Virus record (IMG/VR): IMGVR_UViG_3300043399_000272
Coordinates: 62,001 to 126,000 of that record
Length of the DNA stretch: 64,000 nucleotides
Reading direction: 5' to 3' (one strand)
The translations under genes and the position numbers were made by a program. Under the pieces are notes generated by a model. That model was not told the origin of the DNA. It ran no database searches and saw only the letters and a program-made list of their open reading frames with translations. Of the stretch, positions 1 through 38,496 are shown in pieces; within the stretch, counting starts at the first letter, position 1, and each line of letters opens with the position of its first letter.

Positions 1-456
1 GGTCCAATCACACGTGAACAGTTTGAAAAAGAAGATCACATTTACTGGGAACGTAGATTTGCGAACCAAGCGTTTGACGAAATGGTATCTCACAAGACTG
101 GTATCAGCATCGGTAACATTCACAGTATGCGCCGTGGCACTGCACCTACATTAGTGTCTGATGATGTTAATAGAATTAAAAACGGATATCCTGACCTAGG
201 CAAAGCTCTGTTGGGTGATCCATCTGAGTTACTACTAGGACTACAGGAAAAAGTAATGCAAGGTATTGAAGAAGTTACTGGAACTAGTCTTGCTCTAGGC
301 AATGAATCTATCACACAACGATTAGATAATATGCATTCAGATCAAGTAAAACCTTCATTTGGTTCTGATGGTCAGCAATCAACTATGTCACCTAAAACTG
401 TTCAGCAGTCTATTCCATCACCCAAAAAATTGTTTAACTCTGAATACAAAAAATAA
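1..456 (+). CDS. 3' part of a hypothetical phage protein (begins before the window)
   Basis: The frame is open from base 1 (GPITREQFEKEDHIYWERRFANQAFDEM...) and continues into track ORF 82..456; no recognisable catalytic motif. Confidence 0.7.
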   Translation, partial: GPITREQFEKEDHIYWERRFANQAFDEMVSHKTGISIGNIHSMRRGTAPTLVSDDVNRIKNGYPDLGKALLGDPSELLLGLQEKVMQGIEEVTGTSLALGNESITQRLDNMHSDQVKPSFGSDGQQSTMSPKTVQQSIPSPKKLFNSEYKK

Positions 457-470
457 TTTGAAAGACTTTG

Positions 471-1130
471 ATGAAAGATAACTTACTATCCAATATTTTA
501 ATTAAGCCCAATGTCATTTCTAAAGAGGGTCTTGCCTTTATCACAGATTATGTTAGACAACAAAACAAAATTGATCTGTCTGTGTTTGATCCTGAAGAAA
601 CTAACAAGTCAGGGAAGACTTCGTTCACGGTTGACAAAAAAGTACGTGATACACAAATGATAGATATTTCTGGCATCATGGATACTATCGTAGACTTATA
701 TAGAGACATTGTTTTTAATATCATCAATCCAGCATATGATTTTGAGATTAGGGATTCTGAAGCTCCGCAGTTATTATCTTATTCAGTAGGCGGACATTAC
801 TTGCCGCACGTAGACGGTCAATCATTATGGAAAGCTCCTGACGGAGAAGTATTATGGAGGAAATCAACAGATCGTGACTTGAGTACTGTTCTTTTTCTAA
901 ACGATGATTTTGAAGGGGGTGATTTTGTATTCCCAGAACTTAGAGTCAGAATTCGTCCTGAGCCTGGTATGCTAGTATGCTTCCCTTCAACTTTTAGTTA
1001 TTTACATGGTGTAGAACCAGTAACTAAAGGACATCGTTTATCTATGGTAAATTGGATGACTGTCAAGGGTTTCACGACACTAGATGAAGAAACTAAGATT
1101 ATTAACGATAAATATAATATCAAAGGATAA
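471..1130 (+). CDS. 2OG-Fe(II) oxygenase, prolyl-4-hydroxylase-like
   Basis: HxD (PHVDG), STVLFLNDDFEGGDF, distal His and Arg (YLHGVEPVTKGHR); ATG at 471 (track starts at TTG 468). Confidence 0.9.
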   Translation: MKDNLLSNILIKPNVISKEGLAFITDYVRQQNKIDLSVFDPEETNKSGKTSFTVDKKVRDTQMIDISGIMDTIVDLYRDIVFNIINPAYDFEIRDSEAPQLLSYSVGGHYLPHVDGQSLWKAPDGEVLWRKSTDRDLSTVLFLNDDFEGGDFVFPELRVRIRPEPGMLVCFPSTFSYLHGVEPVTKGHRLSMVNWMTVKGFTTLDEETKIINDKYNIKG

Positions 1131-1135
1131 TAATT

Positions 1136-1501
1136 ATGCAATATTTAAAACACTACTACGTTGACAGCAGCAATCCATCAATATATTTAACTGAGAGCAA
1201 CATAGCACCGAACGGAAAAACACATCCGTTGATAGATGGGTTAGATGTAAAGATTTGGATCAATGAGCCACAATCAACAGTAGATTACTGTTTATCTGTA
1301 TGTCCAGATACTACTACTGTTACAGTAGTAACAGGCATTGAAGTATTAACATTTGATCAATGGGCAGATCAAGCAGAATCTCACTTCAATGAAGTCAAAG
1401 GTGATAGTTCCATAGTAATGAATAAGTCTAGTTTAGAAACAGTCATGCAGGCTTACTATGATTTAGCTGTTGAAAACGCTCCAGATATACCGCAACCATA
1501 A
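1136..1501 (+). CDS. hypothetical protein
   Basis: 121-aa ORF tightly packed between co-oriented genes. Confidence 0.7.
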   Translation: MQYLKHYYVDSSNPSIYLTESNIAPNGKTHPLIDGLDVKIWINEPQSTVDYCLSVCPDTTTVTVVTGIEVLTFDQWADQAESHFNEVKGDSSIVMNKSSLETVMQAYYDLAVENAPDIPQP

Positions 1502-1506
1502 AAAAT

Positions 1507-2124
1507 ATGAAGTTCAAGTATGCAGTTGTAGATGATTTCTACAATAATCCATATGATATAAGAAAATACGCACTGTCATTAGATTACCCCGAACCTTTTG
1601 AGGGATATACATATCCGGGAAGGAACTCTACGAAAAGTGTATATGACCAATCACTGCATAACGAGATAGAAAAAATTTGCGGTAGTAAACTTAGATATCC
1701 TAAATCTGATACGGAGGCGGGATATTTTAGACTTTCAACAGAAAACGACACGTTTGAACAATATATTCACGTTGATCCTGGTTGGGATATTGCTGGGGTA
1801 TTGTATTTAAATCCACCAAATCAGTGCGAAATTGAAGGTGGTACTAGTTTTTGGATGCACAAAAAATTAGGAATTGAGCATTGTCCTAGAAACCCTGAAG
1901 AAGCCGCACTATTAGGTTATGATACGTATCATAGTATTCGTGAAAACTTAATTTACGGGGACGGATTAGATGACACTAAATGGTTAAAGTACTTAATGGT
2001 TCCCATGAAGTTCAATCGTTTAGTGTTGTTCGATTCTCTTTTATGGCATAGTCACAATGCAAACTTTGGTGATAAAAAAGAAAACGCACGTTTAGTGCAG
2101 TTGTTCTTCTTAAAATACGCATAA
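1507..2124 (+). CDS. 2OG-Fe(II) oxygenase-like protein (DUF6445-like)
   Basis: HxD (YIHVDP), AGVLYLNP, GGTSFW, KFNRLVLFDSLLWHS. Confidence 0.8.
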   Translation: MKFKYAVVDDFYNNPYDIRKYALSLDYPEPFEGYTYPGRNSTKSVYDQSLHNEIEKICGSKLRYPKSDTEAGYFRLSTENDTFEQYIHVDPGWDIAGVLYLNPPNQCEIEGGTSFWMHKKLGIEHCPRNPEEAALLGYDTYHSIRENLIYGDGLDDTKWLKYLMVPMKFNRLVLFDSLLWHSHNANFGDKKENARLVQLFFLKYA

Positions 2125-2127
2125 ATA
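2120..2127 (+). promoter_or_regulatory. T4-type late promoter-like motif (CATAAATA)
   Basis: Close match to the TATAAATA late -10 element; about 50 nt upstream of ATG 2176; gp55-like sigma is encoded in the window. Confidence 0.55.
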
Positions 2128-2175
2128 CTATATTCATTAGTCGTTCTTAGTGCGGCTACCTCAGGATATAGATAT

Positions 2176-3121
2176 ATGAGTCAAATAACAGATGTTTTCA
2201 CATTAAATGAAGTATATGAATTAATGTTAGATGGGGTATGGCCTACTACGTATTATCAAGTAGTATGGTGATAGGGGTACTTTTGGTGGCGGTGATACAG
2301 GGTCAAAAACAAACGGTATTGACTACATAACAATTTCTACAACTGGTAATGCTACTAGTTTTGGTACTTTGACTAGTTCTAGAGATGGTGTTCGTGCGTG
2401 TTCTAATGGAACACGAGGTGTGTTTGCAGGAGGCTGGATTACATCAGCTCAAAACACAATAGATTATATAACTATTGCTACAACAGGTAATGCTACTAAT
2501 TTTGGCACTCTAGTTACAGCTAGGCAATCGGTCGGTGCCTGCTCTAACGGAATTAGGGGTGTATTTGGGGGCGGTTCTACAGCTACTAAAACTAGTGCAA
2601 TAGATTATATAACAATTGCTACAACTGGTAATGCTACTAGTTTTGGTACTTTAACAGTTGCTAGAACTAGTTTAGCTTCTTGTGCTAATAGTACCCGTGG
2701 TATATTTGCTGGTGGAGACCTTCAAGGAGCCTATAGTGATGTTATCGATTATATAACTATTGACACTACGGGTAATGCTACTAACTTTGGTACTTTAACT
2801 GTAAGTAGAGGTTGGATTAACGGCTGCTCGGATACAACACGAGGTGTATTTGCGGGTGGTTACGCTGGAAGTTTTAGTAATGTTATTGACTATATAACAA
2901 TTGCTACAACTGGTAATGCTACGTATTTCGGCGATTTAAGTTCTACTAATCATGATCTTGGTGCATGCTCAAATGGTACTAGGGGAGTATTTGCTGGCGG
3001 TAGTAATGGAACTAGATTTAATAAAATAGAATATATCGTTATACAGACATTAGGCAATGCTGTAAATTTTGGCACATTAACAGTAGCCAAATCAAATTTT
3101 GGTGCGTGTTCAGGAACCTAA
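2176..3121 (+). CDS. six-repeat beta-propeller-like virion protein split by a +1 frameshift near 2260-2271 (programmed frameshift, pseudogene or assembly error)
   Basis: SD-like AGGA plus ATG 2176 gives MSQITDVFTLNEVYELMLDGVWPTTYYQVVW* (stop 2269-2271). The next frame is open from 2264 (YGDRGTFGGG...) and holds six ~47-aa repeats (RGxFxGG...IDYITIxTTGNATxFGxL). The track start at 2369 cuts the first repeat. Confidence 0.75.
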
Positions 3122-3138
3122 AAATAATTTTTCATCTT

Positions 3139-3176
3139 AATAAAGGATTGATATATAAAAGTATCAATCCTTTATT
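3139..3176 (+). terminator. 15-bp perfect hairpin, probable intrinsic terminator or regulatory stem
   Basis: AATAAAGGATTGATA / TATCAATCCTTTATT with an 8-nt loop (TATAAAAG), ending in a T-rich tract. Confidence 0.6.
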
Positions 3177-3182
3177 TTATCC

Positions 3183-3827
3183 ATGAAAAAAATTTTAATA
3201 GCCACGCCCTGCCTAGATCAAAAAGTTGACGCATACTTTGTACACAGCTTATGTGAATCCATCAAGTTAGGTTTAAAACACGACCTAGATATTAAATGTG
3301 TGTTTCTAGCTAATGAGAGTATTCTACCGATGGCTAGGAATGAACTTTTTGCATTAGCTTACAATGAAAAATATGACACAGTTGTGTTCATTGACGATGA
3401 CGAATATTGGAATCCACAGGTTCTTATAGACATAATTCAATCTGATAAGGATGTAATTTCAGTACCTGTCGTTAATAAATCTGACAACAAACCAACTACA
3501 TTTAACGTTTGGATAGATCCTCAAATTGTAATAGATACTGACGGATACGTAAAAATTAACAAATGTGGCACAGGATTTTTAAAACTTTCTCAAAAAGTAC
3601 TTAATGATCTTTGGGATTCTAATACAGAGTTAGTGTTTAGAAACAAGAAGTTAAAAAACATTTGCGAGTATACATACGTCAACGGCGACTTTGTTGGTGA
3701 AGACATTACGTTATCCAACAAAATTAAAGAACTAGGTTATGACATTTGGCTTAACCCAAATCATACAGTATCCCACATTGGTAATAAAATGTATGTCGGT
3801 GACTTTAAACAGCAACATAAACTATGA
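3183..3827 (+). CDS. glycosyltransferase, GT-A fold (GT2-like)
   Basis: KILIATP N-terminal strand, ILPMARN, DxD-like FIDDD, GTGFL, GEDI and VSHIG motifs. Confidence 0.75.
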   Translation: MKKILIATPCLDQKVDAYFVHSLCESIKLGLKHDLDIKCVFLANESILPMARNELFALAYNEKYDTVVFIDDDEYWNPQVLIDIIQSDKDVISVPVVNKSDNKPTTFNVWIDPQIVIDTDGYVKINKCGTGFLKLSQKVLNDLWDSNTELVFRNKKLKNICEYTYVNGDFVGEDITLSNKIKELGYDIWLNPNHTVSHIGNKMYVGDFKQQHKL

Positions 3828-5107
3828 TCGACATAATCATTCCAACATTATGGATGTCCAGTGACTTTGAAAAGTCGTTAGAAATGTATGTTGAGCAAGC
3901 ACTAGTTAACAAAGTCATTATCATAGACAATGCTATTAATAACAGACCTGACTTCAACGTATTGAAGAATCCTAAAATAGAGTTGATATCATATGGAAGA
4001 AACATCTACGTAAATCCTGCATGGAATGAAGGTGTTTTAAGAGCTACATCAAAAATCATTGGAATAATAAATGATGATATCAAAGTAGACAGTACTGTTT
4101 TTCAGTTAATCACAGATTTCAATTTGTCTCAGGGTGATATCATAGGTGTGAATCTTAGAGGATATCAAAACAATTACAAAATCGATGATTACATCGATAC
4201 CAAAGAAGAAATAGTAAAACTAAACTACAACGAGAATCAACCAATCGGCGGTCAAGCATGGGCGTTTGGTATTTGTATGTTTATGTTGCGTGAATCTTAT
4301 ACCCCTATACCTTCACTATATCAAGTATGGTACGGTGATGATTACTTAGCTCAACGTGCAAAAACTGTATATGCATTGAACTCTAACAAGATAAAAGGTA
4401 AGATTTCTGAAACGCTTACTAAGTTCAATGATCCAAATAGTGATGTGTCAAAAAGAATTGAATTAGACTCAAAAAACCTAATCAAATTCAATCATTTTAA
4501 GAACAGTAATAATTGGGACATTCCCCATAATATGATTAAGATGTATGCCCAACAGCGTAATCAAACACATAACTCTATATTTGAGATGGAATACCAAAAC
4601 GCAAGAAATACACCAAGTGACATTAATGAAAACGTTCACGAACTATATGAACTGGCTAAAGAATGTAAAACAGTAGTAGAAATGGGCGTTAGAACAGGTG
4701 TCAGTACAAGAGCATTCTTGAATACTGATGTTTCATTGATTTCATATGATATAGTTTTGAATTCAAACGTGCAAAGACTGTTTAATGAAGCTAAAAGAGT
4801 GGGCAAACAGGTTCAATACATAAAAGCCAATGTATTAGAGATTGAAATAGGTAACGTTGATTTGTTGTTTATTGACACATTGCACACTTACGATCAATTA
4901 AAACAAGAATTAAAACTACACGGGAACAAAGCCAATAAATATATTGCATTTCACGATACCCACACGTTTGGATTGCGGGATGAAGTCGGTAACGACAACA
5001 AAGGGCTTCTATCAGCTATTATAGAATTTTTGATGGAAAATTCTCATTGGACTTTCTACAAATACAAAACAAATAACAATGGATTAACTATCCTTAAAAG
5101 GACATAA
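3824..5107 (+). CDS. fusion of a GT2-like glycosyltransferase and a class I SAM methyltransferase (Methyltransf_24-like)
   Basis: N-terminal IIIPT, IIIDN, VNPAWN, INDD; C-terminal VVEMGVRTGVST and DLLFIDTLHTYDQL...IAFHDT. Confidence 0.75.
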   Translation: MIDIIIPTLWMSSDFEKSLEMYVEQALVNKVIIIDNAINNRPDFNVLKNPKIELISYGRNIYVNPAWNEGVLRATSKIIGIINDDIKVDSTVFQLITDFNLSQGDIIGVNLRGYQNNYKIDDYIDTKEEIVKLNYNENQPIGGQAWAFGICMFMLRESYTPIPSLYQVWYGDDYLAQRAKTVYALNSNKIKGKISETLTKFNDPNSDVSKRIELDSKNLIKFNHFKNSNNWDIPHNMIKMYAQQRNQTHNSIFEMEYQNARNTPSDINENVHELYELAKECKTVVEMGVRTGVSTRAFLNTDVSLISYDIVLNSNVQRLFNEAKRVGKQVQYIKANVLEIEIGNVDLLFIDTLHTYDQLKQELKLHGNKANKYIAFHDTHTFGLRDEVGNDNKGLLSAIIEFLMENSHWTFYKYKTNNNGLTILKRT

Positions 5108-5110
5108 TAA

Positions 5111-6010
5111 ATGAAATATAGTATTTTTCATCTACAAGGTGGAATTGGGAAACACATCGCAGCAACGGCTGTTGCCAAAGTTATTAAAAACAATCACCCT
5201 GATCGAAAACTCATAGTTGTATGTGCATATCCTGATATTTTTAACAACTTAGATTTTGTAGATAGAGTGTACCAGTTAGGTAATACCAGTTATTTTTACC
5301 AAAACTACGTACAAGACAAAGATTCTTTACTATTTCATCACGAGCCATATTACACTACAGACCATATTCACAAGAAACTACCGTTGATCCAAAACTGGTG
5401 TAAGATGTACGGTCTTACTTATAACGGTGAGAAACCTGTAATCAAGTTTAACAAACTTCAATATGATCTTTCTAAAAGATATTGGGTCAAAGGTAGTAAA
5501 CCTATCATGGTTATTCACACTAATGGTGGCATGATGACTACTGATGCGAAACCTTATGCATGGACTCGTGACATGCCGGAATCAATTGCACAAGAATTAG
5601 TTAATCACTACAAAGCAGATTACATGATCTATCAAGTTACAAAAATTAACTCACCTAAATTAAAAGGTGCTAATCATGTTTTTGCTACACAACAACAAGC
5701 ATTATCGTTGATGGAATTCTTCAGTTTAATGCTACACAGTGAAAAAAGAATTCTAATAGATTCTTCGCTTCAACACGCTGCTGCTGCATTAAATAAACCT
5801 TCAACTGTATTATGGAATGGCACAAGTCCAACTGTTTTTGGTTATGACTTACATGACAACATAACTACAAAGATTCCATACAACTTTAAACTTCCAGGAA
5901 GTTACTTGTTTGACTTTGATTTTAATGGTAATGAAATTGAATATCCATTTACTGAAGATCAAAATCTTTTTGATATAAACGAAATCATTGCGTCGGTAGA
6001 CAAACAATAA
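5111..6010 (+). CDS. glycosyltransferase, GT-B fold (GT9/heptosyltransferase-like)
   Basis: GGIGKHI, LIVV..YPDIF, ILIDSSLQHAAAAL.KPSTVLW, typical of GT9-like proteins. Confidence 0.75.
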   Translation: MKYSIFHLQGGIGKHIAATAVAKVIKNNHPDRKLIVVCAYPDIFNNLDFVDRVYQLGNTSYFYQNYVQDKDSLLFHHEPYYTTDHIHKKLPLIQNWCKMYGLTYNGEKPVIKFNKLQYDLSKRYWVKGSKPIMVIHTNGGMMTTDAKPYAWTRDMPESIAQELVNHYKADYMIYQVTKINSPKLKGANHVFATQQQALSLMEFFSLMLHSEKRILIDSSLQHAAAALNKPSTVLWNGTSPTVFGYDLHDNITTKIPYNFKLPGSYLFDFDFNGNEIEYPFTEDQNLFDINEIIASVDKQ

Positions 6011-6020
6011 GGAACAAATT

Positions 6021-6941
6021 ATGACTAAGAAAAAATATTATTTTATGGCTGGACTACCTAGAAGCGGTAGTACTATGCTATCAGCTATTTTAAATCAAAA
6101 CCCTAGATTTTATTCAGGACCTAGTTCTCCTGTAATACCTACAATGCTAGCGATAGAGAATTCTTTAAGCAATGATGAATTGTTCTTGGCTTATCCTAAA
6201 ATAGACTTTGGGAAGAATCTGATAGCTTCTGTTATGGATCATTACTACGCAGATGTAGATAAGCCAATTGTATTTGAGAAGAACCGTAGCTGGGTTAATA
6301 GAATGGAGTATATCAAAGGTTATTTTGGAATTGAACACCCTAAAGTATTGTACCCAGTACGAGATGTTTCTGAAATCTTAGCTTCATTTATATCTATGAT
6401 TAATAGAAACCCGCATATTATTAACGACCGCATCAACTTCATTGACCAGGCACTTGTTCAACAAGGCATACCAATCAATGATGTTACTCGCTGCCAAGCT
6501 ATTGCCGGTCCCGGTATCTTGGGTCAATCGTTTGATGGACTAAAGAAGGCGTTAGCTGAAGGATATAGAGCAAATATTCATTTCATTGAGTACAAAGACT
6601 TAGTTAATAATCCACGTGAAACAATGAAGAAAGTGTATGAATTCTTAGGTGAACCGGAATATCATCACGATTTTAAGAATCTAAAGAACTTGCACAGAGA
6701 AGACGATGTAAAAATCTATGGTTTTATTGACATGCACGAAGTCAGACCCGAAGTCAAATCAACAGCACTTTATCCAGAAGATGTATTACCTGCTAGTGTA
6801 TTAGACAGTGTACGTGGTGCAGAATTCTGGCGTGAAATAGATGATGTACCACTTAGTGATAGCACTGATACTGAAATTAAGCCACAACAGAGCTTTTTTG
6901 GACAAGTAATCAATGATGATAGTGATACTAAGCTAATCTAA
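6021..6941 (+). CDS. PAPS-dependent sulfotransferase family protein
   Basis: 5'-PSB loop GLPRSGSTML; 3'-PB motif VRDVSEILASF; IEYKDLV.NP. Confidence 0.85.
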   Translation: MTKKKYYFMAGLPRSGSTMLSAILNQNPRFYSGPSSPVIPTMLAIENSLSNDELFLAYPKIDFGKNLIASVMDHYYADVDKPIVFEKNRSWVNRMEYIKGYFGIEHPKVLYPVRDVSEILASFISMINRNPHIINDRINFIDQALVQQGIPINDVTRCQAIAGPGILGQSFDGLKKALAEGYRANIHFIEYKDLVNNPRETMKKVYEFLGEPEYHHDFKNLKNLHREDDVKIYGFIDMHEVRPEVKSTALYPEDVLPASVLDSVRGAEFWREIDDVPLSDSTDTEIKPQQSFFGQVINDDSDTKLI

Positions 6942-6943
6942 AC

Positions 6944-6975
6944 ATAAAGGTCTCTAAACGAGGCCTTTATTTTTT
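6944..6975 (+). terminator. intrinsic terminator
   Basis: ATAAAGGTCTC-TAAAC-GAGGCCTTTAT stem (one G-U pair) followed by a T run. Confidence 0.75.
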
Positions 6976-7041
6976 CCTACCTTTTTTTGTACATTCTTTG
7001 TTTAGGCATAAATTATAATATACATTTTATAAAGGTAAACC

Positions 7042-7266
7042 ATGGAACATCCAATTTTCAACATTCAACTTACACTTGATCAAGTAAACCTAATTCTAGC
7101 TACTGTAGGTAAATTACCATACGAGTCAATTGCCCCATTGATGAATTCTATTCAAGTTCAAGCTAGTACACAAATGCAGCAGTATAATGCTGCCACCGCA
7201 CAACAAGCAGAAGCAGAATCACAAGCATCACAAGCATCAGAAGATACAGGCAATATTATTCAATAA
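7042..7266 (+). CDS. small hypothetical protein
   Basis: 74 aa, AAAGG SD upstream, helical sequence. Confidence 0.7.
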   Translation: MEHPIFNIQLTLDQVNLILATVGKLPYESIAPLMNSIQVQASTQMQQYNAATAQQAEAESQASQASEDTGNIIQ

Positions 7267-7275
7267 GGAATAAAG

Positions 7276-8070
7276 ATGGTACAGCGTATACTAGTTATGG
7301 GTTTACCTGGTGCAGGCAAAACTTACCTGTCTCAACACATCTTAGAGCATTTACAGATCAACGGTAAAAAAGTAGGTTGGTTAAATGCGGATGATGTTCG
7401 CAAGAAGTATAACGACTGGGATTTCAGCAAGGAAGGACGTATCCGTCAAAGTTTACGCATGCGTGAACTTGCTGATTCTATGGTTGATATGGACTTTGTA
7501 ATCTGTGATTTTGTTGCACCATTGATTGAAATGCGTAACAACTTTAAAGCAGATTGGACTATTTGGGTCGACACCATAGATAAAGGTCGTTTTGAAGATA
7601 CAAACAAAGTTTTTATACCACCTGAAGTCTATGATTTCAGAATCACTGAACAAAAATCAGAATGGTGGGGTGAATTTATTGCTGCACATATGATTGATAA
7701 TCGTAGACGCCCTACTTTTGACTGGAAAAAAGAAACAGTTCAAATGTTAGGTCGTTGGCAACCATGGCACGAAGGGCATCGTGCATTGTTTGATCGTGCA
7801 ATTGCTAAAACTGGGCAAGTTGTGATTCAAATTCGTGACTGTCAAGGTTGGCAAGGTTCTAATCCTTTTGCGATTGAACAAGTCAAACACTATATCAAGC
7901 GTGATTTAGATCCTCTATATCAAGGTCAATATGAAATTCAAGTTGTTCCTAACATCGTAAACATTACATATGGGCGTGATGTTGGTTACAAGATTGAACA
8001 AGAAGTTTTTGATGATGCCATTCATTCTATTAGCGCAACGAAGATTCGTAAATCATTGGGCCTAAAGTGA
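7276..8070 (+). CDS. cysC: adenylylsulfate kinase-like domain fused to an HxGH nucleotidyltransferase domain
   Basis: P-loop GLPGAGKT, LNADDVR, DWDFSKEGRIRQ; C-terminal GRWQPWHEGH and ISATKIR. Confidence 0.75.
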   Translation: MVQRILVMGLPGAGKTYLSQHILEHLQINGKKVGWLNADDVRKKYNDWDFSKEGRIRQSLRMRELADSMVDMDFVICDFVAPLIEMRNNFKADWTIWVDTIDKGRFEDTNKVFIPPEVYDFRITEQKSEWWGEFIAAHMIDNRRRPTFDWKKETVQMLGRWQPWHEGHRALFDRAIAKTGQVVIQIRDCQGWQGSNPFAIEQVKHYIKRDLDPLYQGQYEIQVVPNIVNITYGRDVGYKIEQEVFDDAIHSISATKIRKSLGLK

Positions 8071-8291
8071 ATAAGTATCATGTTCGTTTCAATACTAAAC
8101 ACAACGGTAGTGATTTAGTTTGGAGAATTTTTGAAAATGGTGTAGAACATTTAGCAACAGATGTTCGCATCATTGGAGAAACTTACACCGAATGCACACA
8201 CGAACACGGTGAAACCAAATGGAACATAGCCTGCAATGGGCGTATAATTTGGGTTGACAAAGTTGCCGTTATAGTAACTGGGAAAGATTGA
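8067..8291 (+). CDS. small hypothetical protein
   Basis: 74 aa; overlaps both neighbours (translational coupling). Confidence 0.65.
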   Translation: MNKYHVRFNTKHNGSDLVWRIFENGVEHLATDVRIIGETYTECTHEHGETKWNIACNGRIIWVDKVAVIVTGKD

Positions 8292-8497
8292 TGAAAGAAA
8301 CATCGCTACGTAGCTTAGCGAAAACTATTAGTTGGCGCTTGACTGGTTCTAGCGCCACTTTTCTTATTAGTTACCTTATATCACACAATCTTAGTGTAGC
8401 AGGTACTATTGCAATAGTACAGTTGACCGCTAATACGATTCTATACTACATTCATGAAAGAGTATGGAATCGTATTAAGTGGGGTTCCTATAGATAG
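8291..8497 (+). CDS. DUF2061-like small membrane protein
   Basis: RSLAKTISWR and YYIHERVWNRIKWG with hydrophobic helices; TGATG overlap with the previous gene. Confidence 0.8.
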   Translation: MKETSLRSLAKTISWRLTGSSATFLISYLISHNLSVAGTIAIVQLTANTILYYIHERVWNRIKWGSYR

Positions 8498-8499
8498 TA

Positions 8500-9600: not shown

Positions 9601-10184
9601 TTTTTCTTTACATTTAAAATTATATCAGCGAATGGATCAGGTGCAGCTACTGGGTGCTTAGCACATGCTTTGGGATCTCCTTGACCTGCTTCTGTTAAGA
9701 ATTCAATTCCTTTAGCAATCTGTCCAATTGGGCAGCTACAGTCTGCAACAGTAGTACCGTTAATGGGATCTTTTTTGTATCTACACATCATACCCCAGCA
9801 ATTAGCAGACCCTTGTGCTACGTCTCCTGAGCAAGATTGAACTTTCGCTCTTGTAGCACTCTTTGGAGTTTGTACAAAGTTATTTGCTTCTTGTGGATAA
9901 TGAATGCGAGGAGCAAATAGACTCCATACTTGCGTAGTAGGATCATCTACATTACATGACCCTTTCATTACACCAGCACTTAAATCTGCAATACTAGGAC
10001 CCTCTAGTACTGGACATTTACAAACAACTTCTGGGTATGAAACACCGTTATTAGTTGTAATAGTTTTTCCAGTCTTAGTACAAGTGCTAGCCGCACACAA
10101 TGCATACTTACCATTACAAATAGTAAGATCACCGGCAAATACGGACGTTGCAAAGAATAGAAATAATAGAATAATTTTTTTCAT
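9597..10184 (-). CDS. secreted cysteine-rich hypothetical protein
   Basis: Sec-type signal peptide MKKIILLFLFFATSVFA; 12 Cys in the mature part. Confidence 0.7.
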   Translation of the reverse strand: MKKIILLFLFFATSVFAGDLTICNGKYALCAASTCTKTGKTITTNNGVSYPEVVCKCPVLEGPSIADLSAGVMKGSCNVDDPTTQVWSLFAPRIHYPQEANNFVQTPKSATRAKVQSCSGDVAQGSANCWGMMCRYKKDPINGTTVADCSCPIGQIAKGIEFLTEAGQGDPKACAKHPVAAPDPFADIILNVKKK

Positions 10185-10194
10185 AATTTTTCAC

Positions 10195-11400: not shown

Positions 11401-11409
11401 TTAGTTTCC

Positions 11410-12103: not shown

Positions 12104-12116
12104 ATCCGTCTCCTAT

Positions 12117-15702: not shown

Positions 15703-15710
15703 TATTTATT
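15703..15710 (-). promoter_or_regulatory. late promoter-like motif (AATAAATA)
   Basis: About 20 nt upstream of the 15682 start. Confidence 0.5.
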
Positions 15711-17481
15711 ATCCTGGATATCCACCCGCTGCTGCACGGAATCCTTTATCTGCGGTAGACCCTCTTACCGCCATTGTAGTAGTATCTGATGAGTATGTAA
15801 TACGATCTATAACTGTACCAGCAGATGGCCCCCAAACAACCCCTCCCATGAACCACCCGTAATCGATACTACCGGTTGCTCCTATGTATCGTCTACCGCG
15901 AGATATTGGACCACGTGTTGCAGCAGTTCCTGTGTCAGATGCGAAAGTAATTCTATCAACATAAGTCCATACTGTCGGGTATTGACCAAGTCCACCAGCA
16001 AACCATCCATAGTTACTATTTCCAGCAGCACCTATACCGTATCTAGCTGATGATAATGGGCCCCTAGCACTGGCAGTAGTATTATCATTAGCATAGTCAA
16101 CACGGCTGACTCTTGATAACTTGTTCGGGTTAGCACCGCCGCCCCACCATCCGAAGTCACTGTTTCCAGTTGCGGCAACAAAGTATGTAGAGGCTGCTAG
16201 AGGACCTCTAGTCTCACTTGTGTTTAAATCACTAGCATAGGTTATCCTAGTTACAACTGAAACACCAGTAGAAGTTCCGCCGCCGCCACCAAAGTAACCA
16301 TAATTTTGATTACCAGTTGCATATCCTTGATATCTTCCGAACGATAACGGGCCTCGATCTGTAGCGGCAGCATTGTCATTAGAGTAATCTAATCTACATA
16401 TTAATGTCGTATTACTACCGTTTCCAAACCAACCATAACTGCTATTACCGGTAGCCGACATGTATTGGGTGTTGATTGTAGATCCACGTAATGTTGTTGC
16501 AACGTTGTCATTGCTATAATCAATGCGGTCTGATTGAGAAGTAGATGGGCTACTAGTACCTGATGCAAACCAACCATAATTAGCATCAACTGGCAAGGCA
16601 GCTACTGCCCAATTCAATGTTATATTTGCTGTTTTGCTAGTGTTAGTTGCGGTAGCAGTAATTAAACTAGAACTATTACCTGCAGTAGTAAATGTACCAA
16701 ATATATTAGCGGTACCTACACTTAACCCTGCCGGTAGTACATTTGCACTGTATGTTACTGGACTTCCTATTGCACTACTAGCACTTAGTGATACCGAAAA
16801 TACATCATTTACAACATTGCTATAACTTGCACCATTAGCAGGTGTACTCCAAGTAACTACGTCTGGGTTAACTGTAACGCTAAACGATCTACGTGTATCT
16901 TGTAGTTCTGTATCAATTGCATCTACCCCAAATGTGTATGTAGTAGAACTTGATACTGATCCCGCTGTACCTGTAATTGCACCCGTAGAAGAATTTAATG
17001 AACCACCTGACACTAATGTCCCTGTACCAACACTATATGTAATAGTACTATCACTTGTTGCAGACAGAGTATAATTCAATGTTTGTGTTTCGTATAACGT
17101 ACCTAAGCTGCCTGCAGCAGTATTCCAAGTAGGAGTACCACTATATTGCATTCCAGGAATATATATACCAGTACCACCGTCAGAATTAATTACATACAAA
17201 TTATATGATCCGGAAGCTTTTGCAGGACTTATGAACGTGATTGTATTAGAATCTACTACTGAGACAACTCCTATAGTAGAACCGTCAACAGTAACTATTG
17301 CACCAGTTTGAAATCCAGAACCATTAATTGTAATAGTTTGGCCTCCTGCAGTTGACGCTGCGGTATCATCACCTGGATAAGTAATCGAGTTAATTTTTGG
17401 TGATGCAATAGCATCTAACGTAGGTGCTAGAACTTCAGTAAGTGCTTGATTTTGTAATGTAGAGTATGATTGTGTAGTCAT
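15709..17481 (-). CDS. virion protein with IPT/TIG and Ig-like domains plus a C-terminal six-repeat propeller
   Basis: GGQTITINGSGF...ITFISPA (IPT); LPAGLSV (Ig-like); six xGNxxYGWFxGG...DRIxYxxD...RGPL repeats; ATG 17481 overlaps the upstream stop (TAATG). Confidence 0.75.
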   Translation of the reverse strand: MTTQSYSTLQNQALTEVLAPTLDAIASPKINSITYPGDDTAASTAGGQTITINGSGFQTGAIVTVDGSTIGVVSVVDSNTITFISPAKASGSYNLYVINSDGGTGIYIPGMQYSGTPTWNTAAGSLGTLYETQTLNYTLSATSDSTITYSVGTGTLVSGGSLNSSTGAITGTAGSVSSSTTYTFGVDAIDTELQDTRRSFSVTVNPDVVTWSTPANGASYSNVVNDVFSVSLSASSAIGSPVTYSANVLPAGLSVGTANIFGTFTTAGNSSSLITATATNTSKTANITLNWAVAALPVDANYGWFASGTSSPSTSQSDRIDYSNDNVATTLRGSTINTQYMSATGNSSYGWFGNGSNTTLICRLDYSNDNAAATDRGPLSFGRYQGYATGNQNYGYFGGGGGTSTGVSVVTRITYASDLNTSETRGPLAASTYFVAATGNSDFGWWGGGANPNKLSRVSRVDYANDNTTASARGPLSSARYGIGAAGNSNYGWFAGGLGQYPTVWTYVDRITFASDTGTAATRGPISRGRRYIGATGSIDYGWFMGGVVWGPSAGTVIDRITYSSDTTTMAVRGSTADKGFRAAAGGYPG

Positions 17482-19301
17482 TATAGTCCAATTGCCTTCC
17501 ATCCATACGTTACGTTACTGTATATCAACTCTACTGTAGCATTGTCATAATCTACTAGCAAATCTGAAGCAGCTCCTTGAATATTATGCCCATTTCGTAA
17601 TACAGTAATATTATTAGCTGCCGCAGTTCCTGCAAGATCACTTACTTTAACAGTGTCACCTAATGTAGCAACACTAGGTAATGTCACAGAAAGTGCGCCT
17701 GCTGATGTATCAACAAAATATCCATTAAACACTGTCATAGTGACGTTTGAATTAGTCAAGTTCCATGTCAATCCTGTAGGGGGATTAATATTACCAACTG
17801 ATGCAAAACTAGTAACTTCAATAGGTGCTTGATTTGGTGGTGCAGAAGAAAATGTTAATGTATTGCCAGATAATGAATATGTAGTCTTAGGTTGTAATGT
17901 TCCAGCTACACCAACGATTGTATAATTTTCAGAACTAGGTGTTACTGATAAAGTAAAGTTAACGGTAGTACCGTCACCGGTAAATGAATCGACTGCAAGT
18001 TGTGTTGGACCACCGCCTCCTTGTGCCCATGATAAGTTACCTGCACCGTCAGTACTTAATACATAATTAGCTGTTCCACCTGGGATATGTAAGTTAGCTA
18101 TATTGCCTAAACTAACGTTGCTTGCACCAGTAAAGTCTATAGTTCCAGTTGCGGTTAAACCAGTTCCACTAACCACAACAACGTTGGCATTTCCTGCAGC
18201 CTGGAATGTGATGTTACCGTTTTCGATAACATTCATTATGCTATTACCGTTAGTAACGTTTGACACACTAGTAATAATACCAGTTAGTTGGCTACCATTA
18301 CCTTTGAAGTAATCAGCACGAATGTTACCGTAACTAGTAAAAGTTACAACTTCAGAATTAATTGATACTACATCACCGAAACCAAATTCAGCATTACTTA
18401 CATCCCAACCCATAAAAGCCACACGAGCTTGTGTGTCATAATAGTTAAGTGCAGTACCTACATCTTTACCTGAGTTACTTGTAGGAGCAGCAGCGTTTGG
18501 TCCTGTTTGTAATTGAATAATCGGGTCTTCAACTGATAAATCTGAAACATTTACGTAAACCAAATTACCATCTACTGTTAAGTCTCCGCCGACAACTAAG
18601 TTTCCTGAAACACCTAAACTTGTTAAAGTACCAACACTAGTAATATTAGGTTGTGCTGCTGTAGTGACTGTCCCTGCTGTACCGGCAGATGTTGCATTAG
18701 CTACAGTTCCAGTTACATTAGAACCGTTGATCCCAGTCAATGCTTGACCGTTACCGATGATATTTCCTACTTGCACATTACCAGTTGTGGTAATTGTATT
18801 AGATCCAAAACTTGCTAAGAAGGTTGCTACGTTACTGTTATTATATGTTACAGGGGCAGATGCAAATGCACCATTGCCATATAATATGTTACTTGCATTA
18901 CCATCTAAGTTAACAGTAGCAATATTTCCTATTCCACTTACATTTCCAACTGCTACTGAGTTGGCAGTTGTTGCGTATGCTACTGCACCTGTTACGTTAC
19001 CGCCGGGTATACTAGTTAAACCTGCTCCTGAACCATTGAATGTGTTAGCTGTTACGTTACCAGTAACTGACAAAGCGTTAGTAGTATTGTTGAACGTTAA
19101 TGCATTACTACCATCAAGTGACCCATTGTTACTATAATAAATTGCAGTATTAGCGACATTAGGTATAGTTGGGAAAACCGTTACATTTCCGTCAGATTGT
19201 TTTACTACTAGGTCATCGTTAGTATTTAAAAATATAGTACCTTTACCACTACCTGGGGTGGGTACTGCATTTGCGTTTTCCTGTTTTAAAATTAATGACA
19301 T
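17481..19301 (-). CDS. fibre-like virion protein
   Basis: G/N/T/S-rich; one QPNITSVGTL module; FTGDGTTVNFTL domain; C-terminal YFVDTSAG..VTLP...NITV..NG domain. Confidence 0.75.
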   Translation of the reverse strand: MSLILKQENANAVPTPGSGKGTIFLNTNDDLVVKQSDGNVTVFPTIPNVANTAIYYSNNGSLDGSNALTFNNTTNALSVTGNVTANTFNGSGAGLTSIPGGNVTGAVAYATTANSVAVGNVSGIGNIATVNLDGNASNILYGNGAFASAPVTYNNSNVATFLASFGSNTITTTGNVQVGNIIGNGQALTGINGSNVTGTVANATSAGTAGTVTTAAQPNITSVGTLTSLGVSGNLVVGGDLTVDGNLVYVNVSDLSVEDPIIQLQTGPNAAAPTSNSGKDVGTALNYYDTQARVAFMGWDVSNAEFGFGDVVSINSEVVTFTSYGNIRADYFKGNGSQLTGIITSVSNVTNGNSIMNVIENGNITFQAAGNANVVVVSGTGLTATGTIDFTGASNVSLGNIANLHIPGGTANYVLSTDGAGNLSWAQGGGGPTQLAVDSFTGDGTTVNFTLSVTPSSENYTIVGVAGTLQPKTTYSLSGNTLTFSSAPPNQAPIEVTSFASVGNINPPTGLTWNLTNSNVTMTVFNGYFVDTSAGALSVTLPSVATLGDTVKVSDLAGTAAANNITVLRNGHNIQGAASDLLVDYDNATVELIYSNVTYGWKAIGL

Positions 19302-38488: not shown

Positions 38489-38496
38489 TATAAATA
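38489..38496 (+). promoter_or_regulatory. perfect T4 late promoter TATAAATA
   Basis: Exact consensus, followed by a GGAG SD (38507-38510) and ATG 38516. Confidence 0.8.

What the first reader, a model, noticed from the sequence alone, without database searches (positions are those of the whole stretch)
468..8497. Accessory island that could build and install a sulfated, methylated glycan
Seen: two 2OG-Fe(II) oxygenases, two GT-A genes (one fused to a methyltransferase), a GT9-like gene, a sulfotransferase, an APS-kinase fusion and DUF2061, all co-oriented and interleaved with a virion-type propeller gene. Established: sulfotransferases need PAPS, and hydroxylation followed by glycosylation is a known protein-modification route (e.g. 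Skp1 in Dictyostelium). Inference: the phage may decorate its own virion, or remodel host LPS for superinfection exclusion.
Basis: partly seen in the sequence, partly recalled or inferred. Interest (0 to 1): 0.6.

Follow-up and report, generated by a model that had tools for sequence, protein, structure and literature searches.

The report
Phage tail-fibre glycosylation and sulfation island
An uncultured marine jumbo phage keeps nearly all its sugar-adding, hydroxylating, methylating and sulfating enzymes in one block among its tail-fibre genes; these enzyme sets travel with fibre genes in hundreds of other phages, so they probably decorate the phage's own fibres, or else alter the host surface.

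Summary

The island is larger than reported, about 19 kb. It starts 11.8 kb before the window and ends at a strong terminator at 6944-6970. It has two enzyme modules.
- Module A: small GT-A, GT4, prolyl-hydroxylase-like 2OG oxygenase, DUF6445, p121 and a sulfotransferase. It travels with 'RGPL'-type beta-propeller proteins.
- Module B: small GT-A, GT-A/methyltransferase fusion, GT9-fold enzyme and a second sulfotransferase. It sits just after a 1395-aa repeat tail fibre.

In 65 non-redundant viral loci with the module-B sulfotransferase, the GT9-like gene is adjacent in 59. The genes therefore do not assort independently.

The 'APS-kinase fusion', p74b and DUF2061 form a separate unit and are widespread core genes, not part of the island. 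The kinase domain is structurally an APS kinase, so a PAPS-supply role is plausible but unproven.

Best reading (about 0.4): cytoplasmic decoration of the phage's own fibre and propeller proteins before assembly. Main rival (about 0.3): remodelling of the host surface receptor. The sulfate acceptor may be protein rather than glycan, because the closest solved relatives are tyrosine sulfotransferases. Nothing here is tested biochemically.

The parts
1..456 (+). C-terminal end of a 608-aa GT4-type (GT-B) glycosyltransferase that starts upstream of the window at L005:15630. Module A.
   Evidence: Glycos_transf_1 scores 34.6 bits against a cut-off of 26.4, and it matches phrog_2170 'glycosyltransferase'. 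An E-x7-E motif is visible in the sequence. It is the only GT1/4 hit in the record.
468..1130 (+). Prolyl-hydroxylase-like 2OG-Fe(II) oxygenase (2OG220). Module A.
   Evidence: PF13640 scores 58.7 bits. The best solved relatives are collagen prolyl 3-hydroxylase P3H1 (1.8e-8), Bacillus anthracis P4H and PiuC. H114-x-D116, H180 and R190 are present. Tet_JBP scores only 17 bits against a cut-off of 34.9.
1108..1114 (+). ATAAATA late-promoter-like motif, 22 nt before the p121 start codon.
   Evidence: The motif is 18.5-fold enriched upstream of genes. 42 of its 97 copies lie within 40 nt of a same-strand start. Of 10 genes tested downstream of the motif, 5 are 'virion structural protein' PHROGs.
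1136..1501 (+). p121, a 121-aa protein of unknown function that follows the oxygenase. Module A.
   Evidence: No family hit. Homologues of 40-44% identity follow the oxygenase in L184, L186 and L196.
1507..2124 (+). DUF6445, a second 2OG-oxygenase-like protein. Module A.
   Evidence: DUF6445 scores 48 bits against a cut-off of 24; PF13640 is weak. An H88-x-D90 ... H181/H183 pattern is present. It matches phrog_1644.
2177..3121 (+). B-type beta-propeller gene (repeats 'IDYITI..GNAT.FG.L'), interrupted by a frameshift near 2262-2270. The called ORF is 2369-3121.
   Evidence: It matches phrog_19111. The N-terminal 30 residues are read in another frame and match paralogue L005:13102-14058.
3183..3827 (+). 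Small GT-A glycosyltransferase (phrog_1574). Module B.
   Evidence: A family profile hits the STIV A197 viral glycosyltransferase at 6.2e-8. D71-x-D73, E173-D174 and H198 are invariant. It is conserved at 62-83% identity in relatives.
3824..5107 (+). GT-A glycosyltransferase fused to a class I SAM methyltransferase. Module B.
   Evidence: Methyltransf_24 scores 26.7 bits against 26.3; GT2 is weak. The invariant residues include N83-D84-D85 and the methyltransferase motif I (E286-x-G288). Its start overlaps the previous gene by 4 nt.
5111..6010 (+). GT9-fold (heptosyltransferase-like) GT-B protein, the most constant partner of the sulfotransferase. Module B.
   Evidence: The model has pLDDT 83.7. 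The Foldseek top hits are WaaF (1psw), a GT9 enzyme (3tov), TibC (4rb4/4rap) and WaaC. It is adjacent to the sulfotransferase in 59 of 65 non-redundant loci.
6021..6941 (+). PAPS-dependent sulfotransferase (ST306, phrog_27463). Module B.
   Evidence: Sulfotransfer_3 scores 59.6 bits and Sulfotransfer_1 54.5 bits. The GLPRSG 5'-phosphosulfate loop and R114...S122 are invariant. A profile best matches TPST1 and TPST2 at 5e-12 to 2e-9.
6944..6970 (+). Intrinsic-terminator-like hairpin (11-bp stem followed by TTTTTT) that ends the enzyme operon.
   Evidence: It is the strongest terminator-like site in the scan of window 1-9000 (12 sites found, 3.6 expected).
7042..7266 (+). p74a, a small protein of unknown function.
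   Evidence: No family hit. It is 90% conserved in L006.
7276..8070 (+). Fusion of an APS-kinase-like P-loop kinase (residues 1-145) with an NMNAT/PPAT-like HIGH nucleotidyltransferase (residues 151-264). A core gene and candidate PAPS supplier.
   Evidence: Pfam APS_kinase scores 43.6 bits. The model has pLDDT 94.7. APS kinases match at Z 15.5-18.2, the next kinase family at 14.6, and the C-domain matches PPAT and NMNAT at Z about 10.5. K15, R42, F50, R55, Q58, GRFQPxHxGH and ISATxIR are conserved.
8067..8291 (+). p74b, a small conserved protein that travels with the kinase fusion.
   Evidence: It is 83-91% identical in relatives, including loci without the island.
8288..8497 (+). DUF2061 small membrane protein. 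A core neighbour of the kinase, not part of the enzyme island.
   Evidence: PF09834 scores 74 bits. It is present in 18 of 80 kinase-centred loci.
15709..17502 (-). 597-aa paralogue of the A-type propeller with N-terminal Ig/IPT-like domains, lying beside tail-fibre genes.
   Evidence: It matches phrog_19111 at 3.4e-37, and its neighbours hit tail-fibre PHROGs. The sequence is shown.

Best explanation
The region is the right-hand half of a tail-fibre island of about 19 kb, probably transcribed late, in an uncultured jumbo myovirus. The island holds two sets of soluble enzymes.

Module A would act on the adjacent 'RGPL'-type beta-propeller proteins. The prolyl-hydroxylase-like oxygenase, perhaps with DUF6445, would hydroxylate them. 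The GT4 and a small GT-A would add sugars, and sulfotransferase ST279 would add sulfate.

Module B would act on the 1395-aa repeat fibre just upstream. A small GT-A, the GT-A/methyltransferase fusion and the GT9-fold enzyme would build a short methylated glycan, and sulfotransferase ST306 would sulfate the glycan or the protein itself.

All of this would happen in the cytoplasm before virion assembly, giving charged, glycosylated host-recognition fibres.

The neighbouring kinase fusion, a separate transcription unit and a core gene, most plausibly turns host APS into PAPS for the sulfotransferases.

Shown here: gene identities, folds, conserved catalytic motifs, co-inheritance of each module with one fibre family, and a promoter-like motif shared with structural genes. 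Inferred: the substrates, the order of the steps, the timing of expression and the PAPS role.
For: 1. Each module is tied to one fibre family.
- In 65 non-redundant loci with an ST306-type sulfotransferase, the GT9-like gene is present in 59.
- Of 35 such loci with at least 8 kb of upstream sequence, 28 carry the repeat fibre, always on the same strand. In 18 it ends within 1.5 kb of the first enzyme gene.
- The prolyl-hydroxylase-like oxygenase occurs in 12 of 30 loci with A-type propellers against 1 of 43 with B-type (Fisher p = 4e-5). The GT4 accompanies it in 10 of 13.
- Module A recurs with propellers on unrelated backbones: Kyanoviridae virus AG-345-L05, siphovirus S-SKS1 and other jumbo contigs.

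2. The enzymes resemble protein-directed enzymes.
- The oxygenase is closest to collagen P3H1 and a bacterial P4H.
- The sulfotransferase profile is closest to tyrosylprotein sulfotransferases.
- The small GT-A is homologous to the viral glycosyltransferase A197.
- The GT9-fold enzyme matches TibC about as well as it matches the LPS enzymes. TibC heptosylates repeat beta-helix adhesins (PMC4358343).

3. A T4-late-like motif, xATAAATA, precedes ST279, a propeller gene, p270 and p121. Elsewhere in the genome it precedes virion structural genes.

4. No enzyme has a membrane segment.

5. The kinase domain is an APS-kinase fold with the APS-binding positions kept. 23 of 80 kinase-centred loci carry a sulfotransferase within 10 kb. 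Most of these belong to another subfamily, and seven are the gene immediately upstream.

6. There is precedent: phage-encoded glycosyltransferases glycosylate mycobacteriophage virions (cited in PMC12582341; PMC11256854).
Against: - There is no direct evidence of any modification, and no sulfated or hydroxylated phage virion protein is known.
- Most loci with propellers (about 50 of 65) lack the enzymes, and repeat fibres occur in small marine phages, so the fibres do not need them.
- Linkage between a fibre and an enzyme set is equally expected if the enzymes alter the receptor that the fibre binds.
- Tail-fibre regions are recombination hot spots that collect accessory genes.
- GT9, GT4 and GT2 enzymes, methyltransferases and sulfotransferases are typical of LPS and exopolysaccharide pathways.
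- The late-promoter assignment rests on a motif, not on transcripts.
- The kinase fusion also occurs in complete phage genomes without any sulfotransferase. In this window a terminator separates it from ST306.
- The co-occurrence counts come from the best 80 loci per search, with redundancy only partly removed and relatedness not corrected.
Confidence: 0.4

Rival explanations
1. Host-surface remodelling. The enzymes act at the inner face of the host membrane on LPS-core, O-antigen or exopolysaccharide intermediates. They add heptose or hexose, methyl and sulfate groups, so that infected cells or debris no longer bind this or competing phages. The enzymes travel with the fibre genes because receptor-binding protein and receptor-modifying enzyme must match.
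For: - The GT9 fold is that of the LPS heptosyltransferases WaaC and WaaF.
- GT4 and GT2 enzymes with a methyltransferase and a sulfotransferase are a typical polysaccharide-modification set.
- Clusters of this kind in cyanophages and jumbo phages have been read as surface-polysaccharide modification that pre-empts attachment of other phages (PMC7824862).
- In cyanophage S-SRM01 the homologous sulfotransferase sits with a glycosyltransferase and a nucleotide-sugar epimerase.
- A relative carries an HldE-domain-II-like adenylyltransferase fused to a cupin inside the cassette.
Against: - No flippase, polymerase, priming transferase, ABC exporter or Gtr-type membrane protein was detected, and none of the enzymes has a membrane segment.
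- A prolyl-hydroxylase-like oxygenase and a TPST-like sulfotransferase fit a protein target better.
- The late-promoter-like motif implies expression at assembly time.
- The host and its envelope are unknown.
Confidence: 0.3
2. No common pathway. The genes are unrelated accessory genes that accumulated at a recombination hot spot next to the tail-fibre genes. The kinase fusion has a nucleotide or cofactor role unrelated to sulfation, for example an NAD- or CoA-type 'adenylylate then phosphorylate' reaction.
For: - The kinase fusion is a core gene with more than 8000 near-identical sequence clusters. It occurs next to NADAR, MazG and topoisomerase genes, or ligase genes, in Xylella and Stenotrophomonas phages that have no sulfotransferase.
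- Its C-domain matches NMNAT and PPAT best.
- The make-up of the island varies between close relatives.
Against: - The gene sets are conserved in order and content across distant backbones.
- Overlapping or closely spaced starts indicate operons.
- The record has no Nampt.
- Sulfotransferases of at least three subfamilies recur beside the kinase.
Confidence: 0.15
3. DNA hypermodification. The oxygenase hydroxylates a base, and the transferases then glycosylate or sulfate phage DNA, as in phages with TET-like oxygenases and DNA glycosyltransferases.
For: - The oxygenase has a weak Tet_JBP hit of 17 bits.
- The island lies next to ribonucleotide reductase genes.
- Virus glycosyltransferases are known to hypermodify DNA (10.1101/2023.12.21.572611).
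Against: - The Tet_JBP score is far below its cut-off of 34.9, and the protein is clearly P4H-type.
- That paper does not mention sulfotransferases or kinases.
- The modules track fibre genes, not replication genes.
Confidence: 0.03

Closest known systems
Virion glycosylation in mycobacteriophages (Freeman et al. 2023, cited in PMC12582341; PMC11256854)
   Same: Phage-encoded soluble glycosyltransferases lie near structural genes and are thought to decorate the phage's own virion proteins.
   Different: Here the presumed targets are tail-fibre and propeller proteins rather than capsid and tail tube. The set also includes a prolyl-hydroxylase-like oxygenase, a methyltransferase, two sulfotransferases and a possible PAPS supplier. 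Nothing has been shown experimentally.
'LPS' or capsular-polysaccharide modification clusters of cyanophages and jumbo phages, such as P-SSM2 (PMC7824862)
   Same: These are variable clusters of several glycosyltransferase families with sugar-modifying enzymes in large marine phages, close to tail-fibre genes.
   Different: This island has no epimerases/dehydratases or PfkB sugar kinases (none detected). It has sulfotransferases and a P4H-like oxygenase, and each module is tied to a particular fibre family.
TibC/AAH autotransporter heptosyltransferases, which modify TibA and AIDA-I (PMC4358343)
   Same: The enzyme has a GT9 fold and sits next to a long imperfect-repeat, beta-helix-like adhesin or fibre. 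The reaction would be cytoplasmic protein glycosylation.
   Different: The phage protein is 299 aa against about 400 for TibC. The iron-finger and dodecamer features were not tested. It matches the LPS enzymes WaaF and WaaC equally well. The donor sugar is unknown.
Bifunctional PAPS synthases and CysC APS kinases (PDB 2gks, 1x6v, 4rfv)
   Same: The N-domain has the APS-kinase fold (Z 15.5-18.2) and keeps the P-loop and the Arg/Phe/Arg positions of the LDGDxxR and FSxEDR motifs. It is also fused to a nucleotidyltransferase-fold domain.
   Different: The kinase domain is shortened (about 145 aa, Pfam profile positions 5-94 of 152) and scores far below the NCBIfam cut-offs. The partner domain is a 113-aa NMNAT/PPAT-like module, not an ATP sulfurylase (PF01747 is absent).
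Tyrosylprotein sulfotransferases TPST1 and TPST2
   Same: They are the best solved relatives of the phage sulfotransferase family (5e-12 to 2e-9 over about 200 residues), and they share the 5'-PSB and 3'-PB motifs.
   Different: The similarity is distant and the acceptor site cannot be compared. Bacterial members of the same Pfam family also sulfate sugars and lipids (my own knowledge).
Virus-encoded virion glycan machinery of archaeal and giant viruses: STIV A197 (PDB 2c0n); chlorovirus A064R and mimivirus L230 (my own knowledge)
   Same: The minimal viral GT-A is homologous to A197. A glycosyltransferase-methyltransferase fusion and a hydroxylase paired with a glycosyltransferase have counterparts in A064R and L230.
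   Different: Homology to A064R and L230 was not tested here. Those viruses infect archaea or eukaryotes, and none is known to sulfate its virion.

Membership tests
PAPS-dependent sulfotransferases (Pfam Sulfotransfer_1 and Sulfotransfer_3) | Family score above the curated cut-off | tested here: met
   ST306 scores 59.6 and 54.5 bits. ST279 scores 57.5 and 32.4 bits. The cut-offs are 27 and 22.
PAPS-dependent sulfotransferases (Pfam Sulfotransfer_1 and Sulfotransfer_3) | 5'-phosphosulfate-binding loop and 3'-phosphate-binding Arg...Ser | tested here: met
   GLPRSG(S/G)T, R114 and S122 are invariant in 8 diverse sequences.
PAPS-dependent sulfotransferases (Pfam Sulfotransfer_1 and Sulfotransfer_3) | Acceptor class: glycan, protein tyrosine or lipid | not testable with these tools
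   The nearest solved relatives are TPST1 and TPST2. This is only a lead.
APS kinase (CysC) | APS-kinase fold | tested here: met
   All of the top 45 Foldseek hits are APS kinases. VIA-align gives Z 15.5-18.2 at rmsd 1.8-2.6 A over 130-143 residues, against 14.6 for the next family.
APS kinase (CysC) | P-loop and the substrate motifs LDGDxxR and FSxEDRxEN | tested here: inconclusive
   K15, D39, R42, F50, R55 and Q58 are conserved and align to these motifs, but the first Asp is Asn, Gly is Ala and Asn is Gln.
APS kinase (CysC) | Full-length match above the curated equivalog cut-off | tested here: not met
   TIGR00455 scores 33.1 bits against 138.7 and PRK05541 41.1 against 127. Only Pfam profile positions 5-94 of 152 are covered.
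APS kinase (CysC) | Converts APS plus ATP into PAPS | not testable with these tools
   This needs an enzyme assay.
Bifunctional PAPS synthase | ATP sulfurylase domain (PF01747) or CysD/CysN | tested here: not met
   The 260-kb record has no PF01747 or PF01507 match. The fused domain is NMNAT/PPAT-like.
Glycosyltransferase family 9 (heptosyltransferases) | GT-B fold closest to GT9 structures | tested here: met
   1psw, 3tov, 4rb4/4rap, 6dfe and 2h1f match at E 5e-10 to 2e-7 with TM 0.55-0.64.
Glycosyltransferase family 9 (heptosyltransferases) | Pfam or NCBIfam score above the cut-off | tested here: not met
   PF01075 scores 17.8 bits against 22. TIGR02193 scores 15.4 against 185.
Glycosyltransferase family 9 (heptosyltransferases) | Catalytic residues and ADP-heptose donor | not tested
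   The N-terminal motif reads GGxGK in the phage family. The record has an HldE-domain-II-like adenylyltransferase elsewhere but no GmhA or PfkB kinase.
TibC/AAH autotransporter heptosyltransferases | Iron-finger motif, dodecamer and about 400 aa | not tested
   Only fold similarity was seen. The phage protein has 299 aa.
Prolyl-4-hydroxylase-type 2OG-Fe(II) oxygenases (PF13640) | Family score above the cut-off, plus HxD...H and the 2OG-binding Arg | tested here: met
   It scores 58.7 bits against 27. H114, D116, H180 and R190 are present. P3H1 and P4H are the best solved relatives.
TET/JBP nucleic-acid oxygenases | Pfam Tet_JBP score above the cut-off | tested here: not met
   It scores 17.2-17.4 bits against 34.9, and this is the only hit in the record.
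GT-A glycosyltransferases (GT2-like) | DxD motif and homology to a solved GT-A | tested here: met
   D71-x-D73 is invariant, and a profile hits A197 (2c0n) at 6.2e-8. The Pfam GT2 scores themselves are below the cut-off.
Class I SAM methyltransferases (Methyltransf_24) | Family score above the cut-off and motif I | tested here: met
   It scores 26.7 bits against 26.3, which is marginal. E286-x-G288-x-x-x-G292 and D351 are invariant in 20 sequences.
Phage seroconversion or LPS-modification systems (Gtr, Wzx/Wzy, O-acetylase types) | Membrane-embedded flippase, polymerase or bactoprenol-linked transferase | tested here: not met
   No such Pfam family was found, and no hydrophobic segment occurs in any island enzyme.
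Phage virion-glycosylation systems | Glycosyltransferase genes linked to the structural genes they modify | tested here: met
   Each module is linked to one fibre family.
Phage virion-glycosylation systems | Virion proteins carry the glycan | not testable with these tools
   This needs mass spectrometry of virions or of co-expressed proteins.

The most novel reading that the evidence does not exclude
Abundant uncultured aquatic jumbo phages make tail fibres and propeller receptor-binding proteins that are hydroxylated, glycosylated, methylated and sulfated by phage enzymes. The PAPS for this comes from a 264-aa minimal 'PAPS synthase', in which an NMNAT-type nucleotidyltransferase does the job of ATP sulfurylase next to a shortened APS kinase. 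That would be the first sulfated phage virion and a new route to PAPS.
Probability: 0.1. Interest if true: 0.85.

Novelty: new variant of a known kind. Interest (0 to 1): 0.6.

Why it matters
Tail fibres set phage host range. If widespread marine and freshwater jumbo phages chemically decorate their fibres, then host recognition, virion charge and stickiness cannot be read from the protein sequence alone.

These modules are common. They would also be a source of protein- or glycan-modifying enzymes.

If the enzymes instead alter the host envelope, the island links each receptor-binding protein to the enzyme that edits its receptor.

Either way, the kinase fusion is one of the most conserved genes of this phage group and its function is unknown. 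One enzyme assay would say whether phages supply their own activated sulfate.

Tried and rejected
- **Near-identical DNA in cultured phages.** Megablast of the region against 50,697 phage records found nothing.
- **The phage as a cyanomyovirus.** Rejected. The capsid protein is 65-69% identical to that of jumbo myoviruses such as Vibrio phage 2.275.O and PA5oct.
- **The many N-x-S/T triplets in the fibre (NTTG) and propeller (GNAT) repeats as glycosylation sequons.** Set aside. The same repeats are common in tail fibres of small marine phages, so they are probably structural.
- **DNA hypermodification.** Rejected as unlikely.
- **The kinase fusion as part of NAD salvage.** The record has no Nampt. 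NMNAT-type motifs remain, so this is not excluded.
- **The kinase fusion as an HldE-like ADP-heptose enzyme.** Unlikely. It goes with sulfotransferases (23 of 80 loci), not with the GT9-like gene (1 of 80). The record has no GmhA or PfkB kinase.
- **The exact T4 late promoter TATAAATA.** Found once against 9.4 expected. The shorter ATAAATA is the enriched form.
- **Host inference from the isocitrate lyase.** The closest cellular homologues are Streptomyces and Aquimarina at about 65% identity, which is uninformative.
- **DUF2061 in the literature.** Nothing useful.
- **The 'atlas' fold library.** Not available.
- **Complex prediction.** Not used, because enzyme-substrate contacts are not a binding claim I make.

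No alternative genetic code was used. No contig looked human.

Full report
**Where the window lies.** The window is bases 62,001-126,000 of a 260,148-bp IMG/VR virus record, estimated 74% complete. The major capsid protein (window 28618-29814, minus strand) is 65-69% identical to that of jumbo myoviruses (Vibrio phage 2.275.O, PA5oct, Phosso). The virus is therefore a jumbo relative of the T4 superfamily, not a cyanomyovirus. Its host could not be inferred. No cultured phage shares the region at the DNA level.

**Checking the observation.**
- Strong family matches: the 2OG oxygenase at 468-1130, DUF6445 at 1507-2124, the sulfotransferase at 6021-6941, the N-terminal APS-kinase domain at 7276-8070, and DUF2061 at 8288-8497.
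- The three glycosyltransferase calls are weak in Pfam, so I tested them further.
  - A profile of the small GT-A family hits the solved viral glycosyltransferase A197 (6e-8), and its DxD motif is invariant.
  - The fusion protein keeps an NDD motif and methyltransferase motif I in 20 sequences.
  - An AlphaFold model of the GT9-like protein (pLDDT 83.7) best matches WaaF, a GT9 enzyme, TibC and WaaC.
- The clustering is not chance. Both sulfotransferases, both 2OG oxygenases, the only GT4 and three of four weak GT2 hits of the whole record lie within 13 kb.

**True extent of the island.** The co-oriented block begins 11.8 kb before the window. The gene order is:
1. a 1395-aa fibre made of about 20-residue '..AG..NTTG..N.F.G..' repeats;
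2. a two-blade mini-propeller;
3. an A-type propeller;
4. p89;
5. sulfotransferase ST279;
6. an A-type propeller;
7. a B-type propeller;
8. p270;
9. a small GT-A;
10. a 608-aa GT4, which ends at window 456;
11. the genes of the finding.

Other structural details:
- The propeller gene in the window starts at 2177 and is frameshifted near 2262-2270.
- A strong terminator hairpin at 6944-6970 follows the ST306 stop codon.
- p74a, the kinase fusion, p74b and DUF2061 form a separate unit. It abuts ribonucleotide reductase, isocitrate lyase and IscA/IscU genes on the other strand.

- I collected 86 viral loci around homologues of ST306 (48-80% identity), which reduce to 65 non-redundant loci.
  - The GT9-like gene is adjacent in 59 of the 65.
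  - The GT-A/methyltransferase fusion is present in 32, the small GT-A in 29 and p89 in 30.
  - Many loci are cut by contig ends, so these are lower bounds.
  - Of 35 loci with at least 8 kb of upstream sequence, 28 carry the repeat fibre, always on the same strand. In 18 it ends within 1.5 kb of the first enzyme gene.
- The second set (GT4, P4H-like oxygenase, DUF6445, p121, ST279-type sulfotransferase, a different small GT-A) is absent from most of those loci. It recurs together with propellers in Kyanoviridae virus AG-345-L05, partly in siphovirus S-SKS1, and in other large contigs including one of 348 kb.
- In 65 propeller-centred loci most have no enzymes.
- Across all fetched loci that carry a propeller, the oxygenase is found in 12 of 30 A-type loci (blades with 'DRIDY...RGPL') and in 1 of 43 B-type loci (Fisher p = 4e-5). 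This p value is not corrected for relatedness. Within the propeller-centred set alone the counts are 4 of 22 and 1 of 43.
- B-type propellers instead travel with p270 (21 of 43 against 0 of 30).

The genes therefore do not assort independently. There are two modules, each tied to one fibre family.

**What the enzymes look like.**
- The oxygenase has an intact H-x-D...H...R set. Its nearest solved relatives are collagen prolyl 3-hydroxylase and bacterial prolyl 4-hydroxylase. The Tet_JBP hit is far below its cut-off.
- The sulfotransferases keep both PAPS-binding motifs. Their profile is closest to tyrosylprotein sulfotransferases (5e-12 to 2e-9), ahead of polyketide and cytosolic sulfotransferases. 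The sulfate may therefore go on protein rather than on a glycan.
- The GT9-fold protein resembles LPS heptosyltransferases and the protein heptosyltransferase TibC about equally. TibC modifies repeat beta-helix adhesins (PMC4358343).
- No island enzyme has a membrane segment, and no flippase, polymerase or priming transferase was detected.

**Timing of expression.** The heptamer ATAAATA, one base short of the T4 late promoter, is 18.5-fold enriched upstream of genes. 42 of its 97 copies lie within 40 nt of a same-strand start codon. Of ten downstream genes tested, five match 'virion structural protein' families, none matches an early function and the other five have no match. In the island it precedes ST279, a propeller gene, p270 and p121. 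This suggests late transcription, but it is an inference from a motif.

**The kinase fusion.**
- It is extraordinarily conserved and common. The word search returned 8000 sequence clusters (its scoring limit), and the 120 best listed are all at least 82% identical to it. The exhaustive search found 2169 representatives at the 50%-identity level.
- The AlphaFold model (pLDDT 94.7) has two domains.
  - Residues 1-145 match APS kinases at Z 15.5-18.2, against 14.6 for the next kinase family.
  - Residues 151-264 match PPAT and NMNAT at Z about 10.5.
- Conserved positions align with the P-loop, with the Asp and Arg of LDGDxxR and with the Phe/Arg/Asn of FSxEDRxEN in APS kinases. The C-domain has GRFQPxHxGH and ISATxIR.
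- The kinase domain is shortened and falls far below the curated cut-offs.
- The record has no ATP sulfurylase or CysD.
- Context is mixed.
  - Close relatives carry the gene with p74b in neighbourhoods that have no sulfotransferase.
  - Complete genomes of Xylella phage Bacata and Stenotrophomonas phage DLP6 have it but no sulfotransferase.
  - Yet 23 of 80 kinase-centred loci hold a sulfotransferase within 10 kb. Most belong to a different subfamily (28-34% identity), and seven sit immediately upstream. Four of those were read at ORF level and their stop codons overlap the kinase start. Three were confirmed by Pfam.
  - Overlapping stop and start codons are common in compact phage genomes. 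The kinase also often borders the fibre island. This linkage is therefore suggestive, not decisive.
- I judge APS-kinase activity about even odds, and a PAPS-supply role for the phage sulfotransferases somewhat less likely than that.

**Weighing the explanations.**
- Several features favour modification of the phage's own fibre and propeller proteins: the pairing of each module with one fibre family, the protein-type relatives of the oxygenase and the sulfotransferase, soluble enzymes without export machinery, and the late-type motif. Mycobacteriophages provide a precedent for virion glycosylation (PMC12582341, PMC11256854).
- However, linkage between fibre and module is equally expected if the enzymes edit the host receptor that the fibre recognises. 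The enzyme families are classic LPS and exopolysaccharide families, and such clusters in large phages have been interpreted that way (PMC7824862).
- I put decoration of the phage's own proteins at about 0.4, host-surface remodelling at 0.3, no common pathway at 0.15 and DNA modification at 0.03.

**Limits of this work.**
- Only the best 80 loci of each collection scan were analysed, while the scans reported more than 500 matches each.
- Redundancy was only partly removed and relatedness was not corrected.
- L012 and L182 are the same sequence as the window, so they give no independent check.
- The costly representative search was used once, for the kinase fusion, because the family scans left it open.
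- No alternative genetic code was used.
- The frameshifted propeller gene was only described.

Noticed in passing
window 2177-2270: The B-type propeller gene has its first 30 codons (MSQITDVFTLNEVYEL...) in a different frame from the rest, with stop codons at the junction near 2262-2270. This could be a real frameshift or pseudogene, or an assembly error. The only other copy available is the identical sequence.
   Followed up: partly
window 8500-14755, minus strand: The island is followed by a block of host-like metabolic genes: ribonucleotide reductase small and large subunits, a 401-aa isocitrate lyase, IscA and IscU. In relative L006 the same genes lie on the other strand relative to the kinase. 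There the reductase large subunit is split by an inserted ORF, and a GIY-YIG endonuclease sits next to the kinase.
   Followed up: partly
window 7276-8070: The kinase/nucleotidyltransferase fusion is very strongly conserved in metagenomes (the 120 best of 8000 matching sequence clusters are all at least 82% identical to it). It also occurs at 36-40% identity in Xylella, Xanthomonas, Stenotrophomonas and Clavibacter phages, in Bacata directly after a NADAR (COG3236) gene. Stand-alone versions of each domain also exist.
   Followed up: partly
whole record; for example window 1108-1114, 38489-38496: The exact T4 late-promoter octamer TATAAATA is depleted in the window (1 copy against 9.4 expected). 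The heptamer ATAAATA is strongly enriched just upstream of genes, many of them structural.
   Followed up: partly
L005:9422-9811 (upstream of the window): This is a 129-aa 'mini-propeller' with the usual N-terminal segment but only two blades. It might form a six-bladed ring as a trimer, as some two-blade lectins do, or it may be a remnant.
   Followed up: no
L005:14113-14925 (p270): A 270-aa helical protein with no family match follows B-type propeller genes in 36 of 65 propeller loci, at up to 71% identity, and never accompanies A-type ones. It may be a chaperone or adaptor for that propeller type.
   Followed up: partly
L005:5222-9409 (1395-aa fibre): The fibre contains a long internal duplication: a stretch of about 70 residues around '...LIIGSYAG.AGLSNTIRLQAGTQCLQVSGGSLTVNGAAVGG...' occurs twice. 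It is also unusually rich in cysteine.
   Followed up: no
window 9597-10184, minus strand: This 195-aa ORF of unknown function has a strongly hydrophobic N-terminus (signal-peptide-like). It lies between the reductase small subunit and the isocitrate lyase and is absent from relative L006.
   Followed up: no
G000:C1:201909-202442 (outside the window; L333:1435-1968): A stand-alone 177-aa nucleotidyltransferase best matches domain II of HldE (heptose 1-phosphate adenylyltransferase, 2.4e-18, below the cut-off). Relative L006 carries a similar domain fused to a mannose-6-phosphate-isomerase-type cupin inside the enzyme cassette. This hints at an ADP-activated sugar donor for the GT9-like enzyme.
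   Followed up: partly
window 55559-64000: A very large ORF of more than 2814 aa runs off the end of the window. It follows ORFs of 756, 980 and 1131 aa on the same strand. I did not examine them.
   Followed up: no
L012 and L182: A second IMG/VR record (147,572 bp, sample 3300047548) is 100% identical to the window over 16,938 bases, so the same phage genome is deposited twice at different lengths.
   Followed up: yes
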